Source: Botryllus schlosseri (Eukaryota). From it: a stretch of DNA of 64,000 bases. A program made the position numbers and the translations under genes. Numbering within the stretch: position 1 is the stretch's first letter; each line of letters opens with the position of its first letter. Location: NCBI GenBank assembly GCA_051294905.1, contig CM119377.1:8680001-8744000 (forward strand), written 5' to 3'. The notes below the pieces were generated by a model that saw nothing but the letters and a program-made list of their open reading frames with translations, ran no database searches and had not been told where the DNA came from. Below, piece after piece: positions 56,870 to 64,000 of this stretch.

Positions 56870-58739
56870 TCATTCCGATAAATACTCGTATATACTGACT
56901 ATTATCAAAGAAATGACAGTGAGCGTTAATATACTTTGGCTTGTGTCACCCGTGACAGAGCTGGTTTCACAATCCATGTCTTCTTTTCCGAATTGTTCTT
57001 CAGCTGGACGACCGATGTTCCACACTTCAAACATCTTCCAAGTTCTTCGACAGTGATCCAAGCTCGTGTCAACGCATGTCTGCAATTCTCGCCACCTTTA
57101 CATATTTGTTCGAAATATTGTTATCATATTCCATATTAATTATCGGCTCATAGAAATCTTGAATAATATAGATTACCTGCAGTTGCCCGTGTCGTCTCGA
57201 GTGCTGTTCCAGTCGCGAATTTGTTTGAAGCACTCGTGGAATACGGTCGTCATACCGGATAGCTCGCAGTTTTCTATGTCCACTGTCAAACGAAAGTTGA
57301 CAATTTTGTTGTAAATGTTGCATGATTAGGCACCTCTTGCTATCATTTCGCTATTGCTAGTGTACATTGTTTTCGAGATGGCACCGCTGAGAAACATGGA
57401 CGTCAAACGTTTACTGTTTCACCCGTGATACCTTCCACACAATAACTGCGTACCCTTGATGCAAGTGATAGCGATTAGACCAGTTTCTAAGCCATCGGAA
57501 TCTTCATCAATTCATAGCATGTCACCACGAGCTTAATCACAAGTAATCCTGGTAAATGTTAAACATCCTATGAATAACCAAGTCTCTCGAATCTAGATTT
57601 AAAAATGAATAAGAGGTTATTTGAATGTAGTTTGATTGATGTAATTTGAAGTAACAGTAATTGAAGTTAACTGTGAATTATAGAAAATATATTTAATTAG
57701 GTATGGTTACAACTATACTCCGATGTCTTCTGCAGATTATAAATAGCAGCTAAGTAAATGACGTGGTGTAAATAAGTGGTTACAGTTGTTTACATGCGAG
57801 CTCGCTTGTCAAAACTGAAAAAATACCCAGTATATATACTAACTTGTACGCTGATGCTTGCATTCTCTATCTTCAACCGTGAAGAAAATATCATCGTTCG
57901 CGTTATGATTCCAATACGGCCAGTAACTCCAAACGCCATCAGCACAATTATCGGTTTGAACTCCTACACAGCCCTGTAAATGGATGTCGATTCATGCGGA
58001 TTCATGCTATTCCAGTCTCGATCAAATGTACTGAAATATTACAACTAGTGTTGCAGTTAAAATAATTGGTGTTTTGAAACACTTTGTTTAAACCAATGTT
58101 TTAAAAAAATGACATTTTAGAAAGATGATAATTGTTTTTTTCTTCAAAAGTTGTATAATTATGCAATGACTGTGTAAATACTTTCGCGAAAACATGCAAT
58201 ATGACGCCACGGACGATATCCGCAGTCGATATAGTCGACGTACACGATATGGAATGGTAGGGACTCTCGAAATCATCGTCGGTTCAACAGTTACAGCACG
58301 TAGATCATTGGTACGGAATGGATGTTCTGATGATGATGACCGCCTACTGCACAATGCTGCATTACAATGTAGATCTGGTTAAAGCTATTTTTGACCCGAT
58401 TAAGACATGGATCGGCAGCCTTTGTCAACAAAGGAGCCATATTTACCCTATATTCCTAATTGTCGATGCCATTACACTGTCACATCACAATTAGATTCGT
58501 GACGTCACATCTAATAAAACAAAACAAACGAACAATGAGAAACATGTTTTAAAGAAGCGCCATGTTTTCAATATGTTTGTTTTAAGTTGATTTTTGTTTT
58601 AAATGCAACCCTAATTACAACCCTACCTGGAACGCATGGTAACGGCAACGATAAATTTTGCTGTCCTCGTGTAGCGGGAATGTTCTGGATGGAATGACGC
58701 AGGCGTCAAATAGCTCCAGAGCTCGCTGCCTGCCGCAAT
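56870..58739 (-). CDS. Four exons encoding two six-Cys helical repeats and a GPI-signal-like C-terminus (3' module of the GH9 gene, or less likely a separate small gene)
   Basis: CGRQRALELFDACVIPSRTFPLHEDSKIYRCRYHAFQ/GCVGVQTDNCADGVWSYWPYWNHNANDDIFFTVEDRECKHQRT/MDIENCELSGMTTVFHECFKQIRDWNSTRDDTGNC/RWRELQTCVDTSLDHCRRTWKMFEVWNIGRPAEEQFGKEDMDCETSSVTGDTSQSILTLTVISLIIVSIYEYLSE*. Cys spacing is 11-17-7-7-27 and 11-16-7-7-26. The splice sites are good. Most of these exons are missed by the ORF track. Confidence 0.8.
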
Positions 58740-61700
58740 CTATCAAATTGGATATCGATAATCAGATATGATGGATATAGTATTTAGTAACAAATATTCA
58801 GGAATGTAACCTTGACAACTAATATATCAACGGCAAAATCGAATATTGACGTCAACTCGATTAGGAACGGATTAGGCCCATACTAACTGTATGTTGGTGT
58901 TAGTAGCTATTTGCAACCAGCTGACTACTAGGGATGGTGTGAACCTCTGAAAGGTTCAGGTTCGTGTGAACGCGAACCTTTTTGAAAGGTTCTGTGTGAA
59001 CGCGAACGTGAACCTCATGACGTCACGTGACGTCATATTGCTAATTCCAACCCTATCTTTCAATGAATTGATAGCCTATATTAATGTACACGATACCTAG
59101 CTACGACTCGGGCCACATGATGCCACAATGCTGGAGTACATATTGGCGTTTTAAACGACGCTAAATGTATCAACTGAGGCAATCAAAGGATATAATAATC
59201 CCATAAAATCAATATCTTCCGTCGCTTTGCCAACAATTTCGACGAGGACTTACCAGGGAATATAAGCTTACGCCTAAACGGTCCAGGCCAGACCGGACAA
59301 TGTATTCGGCGTCTGAGTATTGCTACATGGATATTGAGCAGAGTGTAAAACGGGTTTCTATACTTGCTACCGATATTACCCCATTAACAAGTTATACCGC
59401 AATAGCCAACACCTCAATCGCACGGATTTGGTTTTATTGACGCAGTAAAGATATGAAGTCAAGACTGACGCCGTACGCCAGCTAGATTTTGTACATCAGA
59501 AACGATATCAATCTCATTAATTGGTTGAATAAGCATCATTCGCTGACTACTAATTTTGCTCGTGATGTTGTGTGATTGCGGGTCAAGCTCACAGCAGAGA
59601 GTCACTAAATATTCACAAACGGAAAGCTGGATATTTCGAGCAAACTTTTGTAAAAAAGCAAGGAAAACTTTTAAGATTGTAAAGGTGCGTGCTCGTTTAG
59701 TGTTGATTTTTAGTACTGCCAGCGCCATGCATAGAGTGGCCCGCAGTTGAGATGCAATAACTTTGAACCAAAGATGTTTTAATGACGTGGAAAATTGTAA
59801 TATATGAAAAAGGTTCACAGTGCAGAACCTGCCAAGGTTCTGCTGTGAACGCGAACCTTTAAATTTCCGAGGTTCACATACAGAACGCGAACGTGAACCT
59901 CACGTTCACACCATCCCTACTGACTACTATAGTTACAGTCAGTCATACAAACTATATATATCTTTCATAATTAAAATTATATATCTTTCAACGAACGATG
60001 TAACTGTGATCAACGTCACACTTTCGAAGACATCTCATTGGTAATAATTTGAGAAGAGCAAAAGACTAGGTGGATACTACTATATTCGGAGGCTATTTAA
60101 TAATATAGTAAGACGCGACAACAATCAAAATAAAATCCAAATCGCAACCGACTTACACCGCTTTTTCTCCCAGTCGTAGTTTGCATTATGCGCGCTGGTG
60201 GTACCATTTGATATCGTAAACGTTCCACTAGTAGTTGCAAGATACTTCCCCGTTGTCACTGCGGTCGAATATGACGGGATACTCGGGTACGTGCTACTAG
60301 AAGTGGTGTTAGTAGCAATGGAGCCGCTATCCGAAACAGTCTGATCAAAGTTATCGTGATGTACCGTAGATGCACGGGTGGGAATATCGGAATAATTAGT
60401 AGAGGCAGTTGAAACCACGGTAGAGAAAAAGGTAGTTTGATTGGAGCTTAGTGGAAGATCTTGTTCCACCACCTGTACCGTAACTGTCGTATTTGCTGTG
60501 GTCAAGTCTGTGATTGATTCAATCGAAGTAAAGGACGTGTCACTGACACTGGTTGTAGGCGATGGAGTTGTAGTTGATTGAATTGCAGCGGTTGAAGTTG
60601 TGGATTTTTTATTACCGCGGTTGCTCTTCGTAGGCTTCTTGTTCCTCTTGGATTTAGTTTTCGGTTTCGGCGTCGCGGGCGGAAAAATCTCCAAATACCG
60701 CAAACCTGCGACAGCACTTTGGAATGCGGCGTTGTAGGTCAAAGCGACTCTGTTGGATCGGGCGTTGGATCGGTCATCGACGTACTGATCTTTTTTGTCC
60801 GGTCCGCCAACGACAGCTCCGTACAGGGTGTGTGGATTATGCTCCTTTGAGTACAATGCTGTGAAGTTACACGGATGACTCGGTACCGACGGGCAGGAGC
60901 TTGCCCTATGGTACGGCTGTTTGGGCGGCATTGGTCCATATCCAACTACAAAGCTCCGTCCTCCTCCATCCCCTAGTATGTAATCGATTTGTTTCTTGGC
61001 GAACTTCCTATTCTCTTTAACTTTGATCCCAAGGTCCGCTGTCATGAGACATATCAGTGCTGCCCCAGATGCGTATTGAAGAGTTCCCCACTGAGGTCGG
61101 TATAAGAGTCCTTTAGGAGTGTAATCTCCATTTTTGATGATATTATCACAGAACTCTTTGGCTTGTGTTCGGTATTTATTCTTTTTCGTAATCTTTGCCA
61201 GTAGAACGTTAATTCCAGGCAGTTTATCGTCCCAATAAAAATCGCGAGAGGCGTAATTTTTCATACGGAATTGCTGGTACTTTGACGTGGCATCTCGTAA
61301 GTATTTGGTTTCATTTGTAGCCAAGTGGAGCCAAATACTTGACCAAACTAGCTCGTCCTTGTAGCCGTTGAAAGAAGGGTAGGATGGACCAGCATCGGGT
61401 ATAGATCTGAAAATCAGTAGTAATCATGTTCCAATGTGGCTATAATTGACTGATCCTACTCCTGGAACTAGAATGTACTCATAAGATTGGAATAGGATTT
61501 AAAATTCCCCTTTCGAAAATTATCTTAATGTCACAGTCTGAAAATCACATAAGGATGAGGGCGCAAATTTATACTAGACTATGCGGTATGCGCATATGCA
61601 AACTTCATATGTTTTAAATCACCATTTGGGGAGATATATCGGTGTGGAATTGTTCATATTTAAAATATACATGTATCAATAATTTAAAGTTTAAATCAGA

Positions 61701-63736
61701 GTTTAGAACAATGGCATTTTAGGCTATGATATAACGTAATCGCTTGACATAGTACTGTACATGACCAGAATTGAAATTCGCCATGCCTGATTATTGACAA
61801 CGTTTTATATATACCTGTGATAGAGTCCTCTATATTGATCTGCAAATTGGTATAACTCTTTTGCGTGTTTGATAAGTAGCTTGTAATACTTTTCATCTGT
61901 CGTCTTGAATACGATTGCTGCAGCAGACAGCGCTGCCGAAGTCTCGGCTGCAAGCTCTGTACCTGGAGAGATCTTTGTGATCTTGAAGGCAGGTCGGAAA
62001 TAAGTTATATCTTCTGGTCGCAGCCAATGGCTACGTTCAAGTGCACTGGAGCCAACCTGAGACGTACAAATACTTGGTTAAATTGATTGAATATTCCGTG
62101 ATATACAGTAATCAACAACTTCACCTGGCCATATAGTTCAAATTTTGAAGTGTGACACTTCATGAAGTATAAAGTAAACCACCGAAGCAACGATTTCAGT
62201 TGATCGTCTTCCCCTGCACCCTGATAGGATTCTCGGAAGTTAATCATTCCCCATGATAGCACCGTTGCTGTAAACGCCATTGGAAAATTGAATTTTATGT
62301 AGTCGGGTCCATCAAAAAATCCCCCGCTCAAGTCTACTCCGTCAGACGACTTGTCATCTACGCAGGCTGATCTTCTCCATGGTATTCGAGTGCTTGGTGG
62401 TAATCTACCAGATTTCTGTGCCTCGTAGAACATATTTGAAAATCGGAGGACTTGTCCATAATCTTGATGTTTATCGAACTTTGGTAGTATGGCTGGCATC
62501 AGCTCTCCGGGCTCGGGATCAGAAAATGTCTCCATAGCAACTTGAATTTGTAATACTCCGGCAGCAAGAGTTTGGAAACCGGCGTTGCAATAGACACTGA
62601 CGCGGTTGGAGGTGGATGTTCTATCGTCAATGTAGTTATCCCATACATCCGGTCCACTGACTAACGCTCCCGTCAACTCATTCGGATTGTCGGCATCTGC
62701 ATCCCGGTTAGTCCAAGAGCATCTCTGTGATAATTTCGGGCAGCTACTTGCCCTATGAAAGGGCCGCTTGGGCGAGTTCTTTCCATAACCGACGACGAAA
62801 CTCTGGCCCCCATCCCCTACACAACATAAAGCGAAACCATGTACAAAGGAATGTCGTTGTGGCAAAATAAGCTCGATAGCAATACCTCTATTATGAGTGC
62901 ATATTGCTCACCTAAAATGTAGTTGAGTTGTTGCTGGGAAAATTTCCTGTAGACATTCTTACGTAATCCAAGATTTGCGGCAAATAAGCAAATGAACGCC
63001 GAGTTGCTTGCAAGCGCGGTGGAATCCCGTTTCGAAATATACAGAAAACCCTTGTGCGTGTAATTGAAGCTACCTCCCACAAGCATCGAATCACAAAAAT
63101 CAAGCAACTGGAATCGAAATTCCGTCCTGTGTAAAATACAGGTTTATTGATGCATGTTTACAGTGAGGTATAATTACAATCACCACCAGTACATTATGTA
63201 GGCCTACCCCGACCTGTTTGTCATTTGTGCTAGCAGAGCAATCACAGCTACTTGCTTATCGTCCCAATCCAGATAATTCATCTTTTTTGACTGTTGGTGT
63301 TGTGCCAGCCGCCTTATTGATAAATCCAAATACTTCGTTTCCTTCGTCACCCCGTAAAGCCACCCAGCTGCCCACGCGATTTCATCAAAATATCCGGATG
63401 ACCTGAGCGGAAATAGAGACGTATGCTGTACTGTAGTTACAATACAACATATCGCCGGTGGTCGTTTTACTTGTATTTCGAAGTATTTATAGCGTCTTGG
63501 TATTTCCCGCGGTAACGATCGGCGAAGCGTAACAGGGAAATGGATTCATTCACAAGTTTTGCAGAATACACCGGATTTGTAGCACGCAAGGCGATTGAAG
63601 CTGCGGCAAGTGCGGCTGCCGATTCTGCTGCAACGTCCGAGCCTGGTCTACTCCTCGTTACTGCGTACGATGGACGAACTCCACGGATATCCTCGGGTCT
63701 CATCCAGCCAGTGTTGTCAGTCTTCTCGTCTGAGAC
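56870..63736 (-). CDS. Tandem GH9 (endoglucanase-like, probably non-catalytic) - polybasic linker - Ser/Thr stalk - 2x Cys-rich repeat - GPI-like tail protein; 5'-partial (1142 aa in window)
   Basis: Exons (minus strand): 63736-63471, 63402-63214, 63126-62912, 62816-62125, 62056-61815, 61406-60157, 58739-58627, 57973-57844, 57282-57177, 57095-56870. All GT-AG and phase-compatible, total 3429 nt, ending in TGA. The join 60157 to 58739 is inferred from a consensus GTAAGT donor and matching phase 1. Confidence 0.75.
58046..58613. mobile_element. hAT MITE in an intron of the GH9 gene (same family as 43970-44354)
   Basis: TIR tagtgttgca.ttaaaa / ttttaaatgcaacccta; perfect TSD attacaac. Confidence 0.88.
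58929..59919. mobile_element. 991-bp hAT element with gaacc/gttcac subterminal repeats, inside the intron between the stalk exon and the Cys-repeat exons
   Basis: Perfect TIR tagggatggtgtgaac / gttcacaccatcccta; perfect TSD ctgactac. Confidence 0.93.
60125..63736 (-). CDS. GH9 portion of the gene: C-terminal part of GH9 domain 1 plus complete GH9 domain 2 and mucin-like stalk (reads to a stop at 60125 if the 60157 donor is not used)
   Basis: GH9 motifs appear twice: W.RPED, PGSDVAAESAAALAAASI / PGTELAAETSAALSAAAI, DEIAWAA.WLY / DELVWSSIWLH, WDDK, YILGDGG.SFVVGYG, HRASSC, GA(L/V)V(S/G)GPD. The domain-2 N-terminus reads FYEAQKSGRLP..RIPWR..DLSGGFFDGPDYIKFNFPMAFTATVLSWG. Confidence 0.93.
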
Positions 63737-63947
63737 CTATTTCATAGACACTTTATCGAATACCAGCTTCCATTGATTGTAAGACTATACGCACTACCGG
63801 TACTCAGTTGAAGTGGCGAGTGGTTATGCAGGTAATAATCAAATTCACTGTATTTGTCGAGCAAGAACGAGCTATATGATGATATCTATGCCTGCGAATT
63901 GAGCATGTCATTCGTATCCGTGGTGTTTCGATTACAATGTTCTATGG

Positions 63948-64000
63948 CAGGGGTGGGCAAACTTTTCAGCTCGCGGGCCGCATTCAACATCTGAATCCAT
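63948..64000. mobile_element. Start of a hAT-type MITE (truncated by the window edge)
   Basis: caggggtgggcaaacttttc..gcgggccgca is a typical hAT/Charlie terminal sequence. Confidence 0.6.

What the first reader, a model, noticed from the sequence alone, without database searches (positions are those of the whole stretch)
60735..62610. Both GH9 domains replace the catalytic acid Glu with Arg, using different codons
The GH9 C-terminal signature is [FYW]-x-D-x4-[FYW]-x3-E-x-[STA]-x3-N-[STA], where E is the general acid. Domain 1 reads YIDDRTSTSNRVSVYCNAG (Arg = CGC, 62602-62604). Domain 2 reads YVDDRSNARSNRVALTYNAA (Arg = AGA, 60749-60751). Other cleft motifs are also altered: PHHR becomes PFHR / PYHR, DAGD becomes DGPD (both Asp kept) in domain 2, and the DH..W motif becomes DNTGW / ERSHW. 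The rest of the fold motifs are intact with no stops or frameshifts. Arg kept at the same site through synonymous divergence suggests selection for a non-hydrolytic function rather than decay (inference).
Basis: partly seen in the sequence, partly recalled or inferred. Interest (0 to 1): 0.82.

Follow-up and report, generated by a model that had tools for sequence, protein, structure and literature searches.

The report
Tandem dead cellulase domains in tunicate
A sea-squirt gene that is expressed and evolutionarily conserved encodes a cell-surface protein with two cellulase-like domains, both of which have swapped the essential catalytic glutamate for arginine, so it most likely binds cellulose-type sugar chains rather than cutting them.

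Summary
Codons 62602-62604 (CGC) and 60749-60751 (AGA), minus strand, encode Arg. Each aligns with the general acid Glu412 of the termite GH9 structure 1KS8.

Both domains belong to one spliced, transcribed gene. RNA contigs give six GT..AG introns and an open frame. The gene runs from about window position 74,770, outside the window, to the stop at 56,870.

Its layout is: signal peptide, CBM2-like module, Thr-rich linker, GH9 domain 1, GH9 domain 2, Ser/Thr stalk, Cys-rich repeats, hydrophobic C-terminus. Domain 1 has also lost both catalytic Asp (DAGD to TDGG); domain 2 keeps them.

Both Arg residues recur in an ortholog at 64-65% identity and in fragments at 80-93%. Against that ortholog, synonymous sites are saturated while pN is only 0.22-0.24. 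Within-species variants run 18 synonymous to 7 non-synonymous. This is not decay.

Domain 2 groups with a Glu-bearing Ciona savignyi domain (AU p=0.019). The two Glu-to-Arg changes were therefore probably independent.

The genome carries GT2+GH6 (CesA-like) loci, so it is a cellulose-making tunicate. The best reading is a non-hydrolytic, membrane-tethered glycan-binding pseudoenzyme. Binding itself is inferred. This is a new variant of a known kind.

The scan had already noted this same stretch (s1-249625).

The parts
63471..63736 (-). Exon of GH9 domain 1. It carries the DNTGW motif (63704-63718), where the conserved His124 is Asn.
   Evidence: RNA contig joints, GT/AG check, Pfam PF00759 E=4e-21.
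63214..63402 (-). Exon of GH9 domain 1 (middle of the barrel).
   Evidence: RNA joints 63400/63469 and 63125/63213. Open frame.
62912..63126 (-). Exon of GH9 domain 1. The cleft Trp301/Gly302 of active enzymes read Arg/Asp here.
   Evidence: RNA joints. Conservation table.
62125..62816 (-). One exon holding the end of domain 1 (PFHR at 62752-62763; SNRV at 62596-62613), the inter-domain linker (DPEPGEL, 62500-62520) and the start of domain 2 (DGPD at 62302-62313, both Asp kept).
   Evidence: RNA contigs cross it without a break, so this is one transcript. Aligned to 1KS8.
62602..62604 (-). Arg codon CGC at the general-acid position of domain 1 (equivalent to Glu412 of 1KS8).
   Evidence: The ortholog L005 has AGA here.
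61815..62056 (-). Exon of GH9 domain 2 with ERSHW (62024-62038), where Asp123/His124 have become Glu/Arg.
   Evidence: RNA joints. Pfam E=4e-22.
60157..61406 (-). Large exon. It holds the C-terminal half of domain 2 (PYHR at 60905-60916; SNRV at 60743-60760), then a basic stretch and a 175-aa Ser/Thr-rich stalk starting at 60682. It is spliced at 60157, so the in-frame stop at 60128 is intronic.
   Evidence: RNA joint 58739/60157. Pfam E=5e-62. Stalk composition is 40% Ser+Thr.
60749..60751 (-). Arg codon AGA at the general-acid position of domain 2 (equivalent to Glu412 of 1KS8).
   Evidence: Gap-free alignment to 1KS8..
58627..58739 (-). Exon that begins the Cys-rich C-terminal region.
   Evidence: Covered by RNA contigs X6 and X13. 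Frame continues.
57844..57973 (-). Cys-rich exon. Its splice sites are inferred.
   Evidence: Canonical AG/GT, open frame, conserved in L005.
57177..57282 (-). Cys-rich exon. Its splice sites are inferred.
   Evidence: Canonical AG/GT and open frame.
56870..57095 (-). Last exon: Cys-rich repeat, small-residue stretch, 15-residue hydrophobic tail (56888-56935) and stop. It is a candidate GPI signal or C-terminal membrane anchor.
   Evidence: Hydropathy and translation. No anchor predictor was available.

Best explanation
This is one roughly 1,500-residue gene of a cellulose-making tunicate. In order it encodes a signal peptide, a CBM2-like module, a Thr-rich linker, two tandem GH9-fold domains, a basic and Ser/Thr-rich (probably O-glycosylated) stalk, Cys-rich repeats and a hydrophobic C-terminus (GPI or membrane anchor). 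Both GH9 folds are preserved by purifying selection, but neither can carry out the GH9 inverting hydrolysis. Both have Arg where the general acid Glu sits. Domain 1 has also lost both Asp residues that hold the catalytic water. The most likely function is a non-hydrolytic, surface-tethered binder of beta-1,4-glucan (cellulose) or a related tunic glycan, with the dead clefts and the CBM2 acting as a multivalent grip. Shown here: residue identities, splicing, expression, conservation and selection. Inferred: loss of activity (from GH9 chemistry), glycan binding, surface anchoring and any role in the tunic.
For: Arg sits on the Glu412 position of 1KS8 in both domains. The spliced junction of domain 1 gives GGYY-TDGG-HVKY, so Asp54 is Thr and Asp57 is Gly; L005 reads IDGG at the same place. 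Three runs carry spliced RNA contigs with six canonical introns. The frame is open from domain 1 to the stop. Both Arg residues are conserved in L005 (64-65% identity), in P0001 (80%) and in P0343 (93%). pS is 0.86-0.88 against pN 0.22-0.24. Polymorphism is 18 synonymous to 7 non-synonymous in the GH9 part, against 1 to 8 in the stalk. Of 75 conserved aromatic or charged columns, domain 1 keeps 52-55 and domain 2 keeps 58-59, so the fold and much of the cleft are retained. The N-terminal 121 residues match the CBM2 modules of other animal GH9 proteins (phmmer E 1e-17 to 1e-8 in the local set), with the aromatic positions kept as W, F/Y and Y. An acid-site mutant (Glu439 to Gln) of a bacterial GH9 appears as Q439 in PDB entry 7v0i and lies within about 3 Å of the +1 glucosyl O4, consistent with cleft binding without the acid (PMC10149213). 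The genome has GT2+GH6 CesA-like loci and at least 12 paralogs that keep Glu, so hydrolysis is covered elsewhere.
Against: No binding or activity data exist. Several cleft residues besides the acid are altered in both domains: His124, His359 in part, Tyr408 and Asp416. Domain 1 also loses Trp301. The original cellulose-binding cleft may therefore be remodelled for another ligand, or for none. Pfam does not call the CBM2: the best exon scores 13.5 bits against a cut-off of 24. I could not fold a spliced domain, because no reference exists for a spliced sequence, so the Arg side-chain environment is unknown. The tissue of expression is unknown. The one bulk RNA run read as raw reads showed almost no coverage of the exons.
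Confidence: 0.6

Rival explanations
1. The protein is a Klotho-like scaffold. The two dead GH9 folds would serve as protein-protein interaction or receptor modules, and the clefts would no longer bind carbohydrate.
For: Many cleft residues are changed besides the acid, including His124, Tyr408 and Asp416, and Trp301 in domain 1. The C-terminal Cys-rich repeats and membrane tether resemble a receptor layout.
Against: An N-terminal CBM2-like module with its aromatic positions kept points to a carbohydrate partner. Most conserved cleft aromatics are retained, especially in domain 2.
Confidence: 0.2
2. Domain 2 is still an enzyme with altered chemistry. It keeps both Asp residues, and Arg or another residue could support a different reaction, such as action on an anionic tunic glycan, transglycosylation, or hydrolysis with an acid supplied from elsewhere.
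For: Asp54 and Asp57 are kept in domain 2 in both species (DGPD and DGGD). Strong purifying selection acts on the cleft region. From my own knowledge, Arg acts as a catalytic base in some polysaccharide lyases.
Against: No conserved new Glu or Asp appears in domain 2 at otherwise conserved columns. His124, Tyr408 and Asp416 are lost along with the acid. Domain 1 carries the same Arg but has no Asp pair, which argues for a shared non-catalytic reason.
Confidence: 0.12
3. The gene is a decaying pseudogene or an assembly artefact.
For: Catalytic residues are missing from both domains.
Against: Spliced transcripts occur in three runs. A 1,266-codon frame is open. pN is far below pS. There is an excess of synonymous polymorphism. 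The same substitutions occur in at least three other sequences.
Confidence: 0.02

Closest known systems
Animal GH9 endo-beta-1,4-glucanases, such as Nasutitermes NtEgl (PDB 1KS8)
   Same: Clear homologs: 44% (domain 1) and 49% (domain 2) identity over about 430 residues, a full-length PF00759 match, and most fold-core residues kept. Some relatives also have an N-terminal CBM2.
   Different: The general acid Glu412 is Arg in both domains. Asp54 and Asp57 are lost in domain 1. His124, His359, Tyr408 and Asp416 are altered. Two GH9 domains sit in tandem on a mucin-like stalk with a membrane tether.
Sporadic acid-less GH9 paralogs in other animals: Saccoglossus P0255, Coptotermes P0321, Diploptera P0330
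   Same: These are GH9 folds without Glu412 (Lys, Met and Ala respectively), and all three also lack Asp57. GH9 pseudoenzymes are therefore not unique to this gene.
   Different: None of them has Arg. No tandem pair of acid-less domains was seen among these hits. I found no paper describing them as binders.
Klotho, a membrane protein with two tandem GH1-like domains that each lack a catalytic Glu (own knowledge)
   Same: Both are tandem glycosidase-fold pseudoenzyme domains on a membrane-tethered extracellular protein, conserved under selection.
   Different: The fold family is unrelated (GH1 TIM barrel against the GH9 alpha/alpha-6 barrel). Klotho acts as a co-receptor scaffold. There is no homology.
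GH18 chitinase-like lectins, such as YKL-40, Ym1 and insect IDGFs (own knowledge)
   Same: A glycosidase fold is kept, the catalytic acid is replaced, and glycan binding is kept without hydrolysis.
   Different: The fold and the ligand differ. These are soluble single-domain proteins.
Plant COBRA (GPI-anchored, CBM2-like plus Cys-rich) and KORRIGAN (membrane GH9 of the cellulose synthase complex; cited in PMC10334666)
   Same: These are surface-tethered proteins of cellulose-making organisms that combine a cellulose-binding module, a Cys-rich region and a GPI-type tail (COBRA), or a GH9 fold (KORRIGAN).
   Different: The resemblance is by analogy only. No COBRA Pfam match was found on the C-terminal exons. 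KORRIGAN is catalytically active (own knowledge) and is anchored at its N-terminus (own knowledge).

Membership tests
GH9 (sequence family, Pfam PF00759) | Significant full-length match to the Glyco_hydro_9 profile | tested here: met
   The exons together cover profile positions 1-443 of both domains, with E from 5e-62 to 2e-8.
GH9 (active endoglucanase) | General acid Glu (Glu412 of 1KS8; Glu439 of CelR) | tested here: not met
   Arg is at that column in both domains.
GH9 (active endoglucanase) | Asp pair holding the nucleophilic water (DAGD; Asp54 and Asp57) | tested here: inconclusive
   Domain 2 meets it (DGPD). Domain 1 does not (TDGG across an inferred splice junction, conserved as IDGG in L005).
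GH9 (active endoglucanase) | PROSITE-type signatures: the His of P-H-H-R, and [FYW]-x-D-x4-[FYW]-x3-E (recalled from memory) | tested here: not met
   The motifs read PFHR and PYHR. Tyr408 is deleted in domain 1 and is Ala in domain 2. Glu is Arg.
CBM2 cellulose-binding module | Homology to PF00553 modules, with surface aromatics | tested here: inconclusive
   Pfam on single exons scored at most 13.5 bits against a cut-off of 24. The spliced 121-aa N-terminus matches the N-terminal regions, where the CBM2 modules are expected to lie, of PF00553-annotated animal GH9 proteins at E 1e-17 to 1e-8 in a 348-protein set, with the aromatic positions kept as W, F/Y and Y.
GPI-anchored protein | N-terminal signal peptide, plus C-terminal small residues, a spacer and a hydrophobic tail | tested here: inconclusive
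   There is a hydrophobic N-terminus. The C-terminus reads ...SSVTGDTSQS, then 15 hydrophobic residues, then five polar residues. No predictor was available, and a plain transmembrane anchor is equally possible.
Tunicate genome (cellulose producer) | Animal-type introns together with CesA-like GT2+GH6 loci | tested here: met
   GH6 hits lie at C9:15.03 and 15.07 Mb. GT2 hits lie at C9:15.029 and 15.088 Mb on the same strand. The closest named relative of domain 2 is from Ciona savignyi.
COBRA family | Match to the COBRA Pfam domain | tested here: not met
   The Pfam scan of the C-terminal Cys-rich exons returned no COBRA hit. The resemblance is architectural only.

The most novel reading that the evidence does not exclude
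Two independent Glu-to-Arg replacements turned both clefts of an ancient tandem GH9 into non-cutting glycan grips on a CBM2-bearing, mucin-stalked, membrane-tethered protein. This protein would organise or anchor nascent cellulose microfibrils at the epidermis-tunic interface. It would be an animal counterpart, arrived at by convergence, of the plant COBRA/KORRIGAN accessory proteins of cellulose synthesis.
Probability: 0.25. Interest if true: 0.8.

Novelty: new variant of a known kind. Interest (0 to 1): 0.6.

Why it matters
Tunicates are the only animals that make cellulose. Beyond CesA and GH6-1, the proteins that shape the tunic are largely unknown, and recent papers say they are still looking for cellulase-type factors (PMC10986139). 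A conserved, expressed, surface-tethered protein with a CBM2 and two catalytically dead GH9 clefts is a concrete candidate, testable by knock-out and binding assays. It is also a clean case of pseudoenzyme evolution: the same unusual residue (Arg, at least two nucleotide steps from Glu) is fixed at the acid site of two anciently diverged domains, probably twice independently.

Tried and rejected
- **Structure prediction:** I did not fold a complete Arg-type domain. Each domain is split over three or more exons, and no tool reference exists for a spliced protein, so the step was left out rather than typing the sequence.
- **Full-length orthologs in the protein database:** the length filter (0.55-1.75 times a query of at most 432 aa) kept proteins of about 1,500 aa out of reach. 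Domain 1 of Ciona could therefore not be examined.
- **Gene conversion between the two domains:** overall third-position identity within a species (0.34-0.36) is no higher than across species (0.33-0.36). Only the 15-codon window around the acid site is raised (0.50-0.57 against 0.14-0.36). That could be codon bias or a short conversion tract, so the question stays unresolved.
- **Synteny:** the M16C peptidase neighbour of L005 was not found within 7 kb upstream of the gene.
- **Species of SRR10746996 and SRR25569784:** no paper mentions either accession.
- **Literature on tunicate or other GH9 pseudoenzymes:** nothing relevant was found.
- **Pfam on the C-terminal Cys exons:** no family matched.
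- **A second copy in this genome:** none was found.
- **Rfam scan of 58700-64000:** no hits.
Full report
**What is at the coordinates.** The minus strand of 60,100-63,740 carries GH9 (PF00759) coding pieces separated by short stop-containing gaps. Codon 62602-62604 is CGC and codon 60749-60751 is AGA. Both encode the Arg of an S-N-R-V motif that replaces the N-E-V motif of GH9 enzymes.

phmmer against all PDB chains puts domain 2's Arg on Glu412 of the termite endoglucanase 1KS8, with no gap nearby. Domain 1's Arg lands on the same residue, with one residue deleted four positions upstream. From my own knowledge, Glu412 is the proton donor of NtEgl and Asp54/Asp57 hold the water. The equivalent triad D71/D74/E439 is described for CelR in PMC10149213.

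**It is one spliced, expressed gene that leaves the window.** Contigs from three public runs of the same organism skip six stretches of the DNA, each bounded by GT..AG on the minus strand (refined). The resulting exons are 63736-63471, 63402-63214, 63126-62912, 62816-62125, 62056-61815, 61406-60157 and 58739-58627.

- One exon (62816-62125) contains the end of domain 1, a linker and the start of domain 2, so the two domains lie in one polypeptide.
- The stop at 60128 that ends the raw ORF is intronic.
- I fetched the flanking genome. Two upstream domain-1 exons, three downstream Cys-rich exons and the first two exons could be placed by canonical splice sites, open frame and conservation in the ortholog. 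These are inferred, not RNA-verified.
- From the start of domain 1 to the stop at 56870 the spliced frame is 1,266 codons with no stop.

**Architecture.**

- The first exon starts with a Met and a hydrophobic leader.
- Spliced to exon 2, it gives a 121-residue N-terminus that matches the CBM2 modules of other animal GH9 proteins. phmmer gives E 1e-17 to 1e-8 in the local 348-protein set. The alignment keeps the W..GF, GW and NKxW/YN landmarks, with aromatic residues at all three positions.
- Pfam on single exons stays below threshold, so I call this module CBM2-like.
- Next come a Thr-rich linker, domain 1, domain 2 and a Lys/Arg-rich stretch.
- A 175-residue stalk follows that is 40% Ser+Thr. 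After it come Cys-rich repeats and a C-terminus made of small residues followed by 15 hydrophobic ones.
- That tail is a GPI-signal-like or transmembrane anchor. I confirmed the exons but could not run a predictor.

**Catalytic machinery.**

- Domain 2 keeps both Asp (DGPD here, DGGD in the ortholog).
- The spliced junction of domain 1 reads GGYY-TDGG-HVKY (IDGG in the ortholog), so Asp54 and Asp57 are both gone.
- I compared the four domains with 110 full-length animal GH9 domains. Both domains share changes at His124, His359 (in part), Tyr408, Glu412 and Asp416. Domain 1 also loses Trp301 and Gly302.
- Of 75 well-conserved aromatic or charged columns, domain 1 keeps 52-55 and domain 2 keeps 58-59. 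The fold core is intact and the changes lie in known or likely cleft positions.
- PMC10149213 names Y435, which by offset from the acid corresponds to Tyr408, and W330, which I tentatively equate with Trp301, as cleft residues.

**Selection, not decay.**

- A 9.7-kb contig from another sample (L005) carries the same gene with the same exon junctions. It is 64% (domain 1) and 65% (domain 2) identical at the protein level and has Arg in both domains.
- Fragments from a third sample have Arg in domain 2 (P0001, 80% identity) and in domain 1 (P0343, 93% identity).
- Against L005, synonymous sites are saturated (pS 0.86-0.88) while pN is 0.22-0.24 in each GH9 domain. The stalk has pN 0.53.
- Variants between the assembly and the RNA contigs are 18 synonymous to 7 non-synonymous in the GH9 part, and 1 to 8 in the stalk. 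The binomial test gives p=2e-7 and the Fisher test p=0.004. That list is the tool's best-supported subset.
- Domain 1's Arg codon is CGC here and AGA in L005, two synonymous steps apart.
- The gene is single-copy in this genome.

**History of the two Arg residues.**

- Domains 1 and 2 are only 41-45% identical, no closer to each other than to the termite enzyme.
- In an IQ-TREE analysis, domain 2 of both species groups with a Ciona savignyi fragment (H2Z0W9, P0003) with support 100/98. That fragment begins in a similar inter-domain linker and has Glu at the acid column.
- Forcing the four Arg-bearing domains into one clade costs 15.5 log-likelihood units (AU p=0.019). The group was defined after the tree had been seen, so this p-value is optimistic.
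- The simplest reading is two independent Glu-to-Arg replacements, each needing at least two nucleotide changes.
- A reversal in Ciona, or a short gene-conversion tract, cannot be excluded. Third-position identity between the domains is locally raised around the acid site, but over only 14 codons.

**Context.**

- The genome has at least 15 GH9 loci. Of the 13 paralog C-terminal exons read, 12 keep N/T/S-E-V (one of these 12 also lacks the conserved Asp pair upstream), and two have Ser instead of Glu.
- It also has two GT2+GH6 loci on C9, the tunicate CesA arrangement. The organism is therefore a cellulose-producing tunicate with plenty of presumably active GH9 enzymes.
- Acid-less GH9 paralogs also occur in a hemichordate, a termite and a cockroach, with Lys, Met and Ala at the acid column. 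None has Arg.
- I found no paper describing a tunicate GH9 pseudoenzyme.

**Mechanism proposed.** GH9 enzymes invert by acid-assisted departure of the leaving group. Without the Glu, natural glycosidic bonds are not cleaved at useful rates, and a Glu-to-Gln variant of a bacterial GH9 has been crystallised, its side chain lying against the +1 glucosyl unit in the cleft. Domain 1 also lacks the base pair.

I therefore read both domains as hydrolytically dead but structurally maintained clefts. Together with the CBM2-like module they would form a multivalent glycan binder, held above the membrane on a glycosylated stalk. The natural ligand is most likely tunic cellulose. The extra cleft changes and the new positive charge leave room for another tunic glycan, or for a protein partner.

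**Verdict.** The case is a new variant of a known kind (glycosidase-fold pseudoenzymes). It is of moderate to high interest because of the organism, the architecture and the probable parallel Glu-to-Arg change.

Noticed in passing
window 58930-59918 (inside the 58740-60156 intron): A roughly 1-kb element bounded by 30-nt inverted repeats (58938-58967 and 59849-59878). In all RNA-type runs its contig depth is 100-300 times that of the exons, and many different flanks join at 58926-58929 and 59918-59919. It is probably a dispersed TIR transposon or MITE, not part of the gene.
   Followed up: partly
window 63941-64000: The last 60 bases of the window recur at 93-100% identity at 40 or more places on many chromosomes, and contig depth is very high there. 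This is a short dispersed repeat inside the long intron of domain 1.
   Followed up: no
G000:C13:21833250-21833520 (L019) and G000:C4:20068700-20068980 (L020): Two other GH9 paralogs of this genome also lack the acid Glu (N-S-V and C-S-V in place of N-E-V). A tandem pair on C16 (L017, L018) keeps Glu but lacks the conserved Asp-Asp upstream. The family holds several non-canonical members.
   Followed up: no
proteins P0255 (Saccoglossus), P0321 (Coptotermes), P0330 (Diploptera), P0276, P0338: These GH9 proteins of other animals have Lys, Met, Ala, Val or Asp at the acid column. Three of them also lack Asp57. Acid-less GH9 paralogs seem to arise repeatedly in animals.
   Followed up: partly
G000:C9:15025585-15029719 and C9:15068570-15088831: Two loci each combine a GT2 (PF13632) hit and a GH6 (PF01341) hit on the same strand. 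This is the CesA-type arrangement of tunicates, apparently duplicated.
   Followed up: partly
window 60157-60682 (Ser/Thr stalk): The stalk evolves fast: pN is 0.53 against the ortholog, and 8 of 9 within-species variants are non-synonymous. This contrasts with the flanking GH9 domains.
   Followed up: partly
sample SRR25569784 (P0343, P0345, P0001): One sample holds a 93%-identical version and a 78-80%-identical version of this gene. It either has two paralogs or mixes two species. No DNA could be fetched.
   Followed up: no
protein P0003 (Ciona savignyi H2Z0W9): The Glu-bearing Ciona relative of domain 2 has lost the otherwise invariant R-P-E-D motif (it reads W-R-S-P-P-R-N). It may not be a standard enzyme either.
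   Followed up: no
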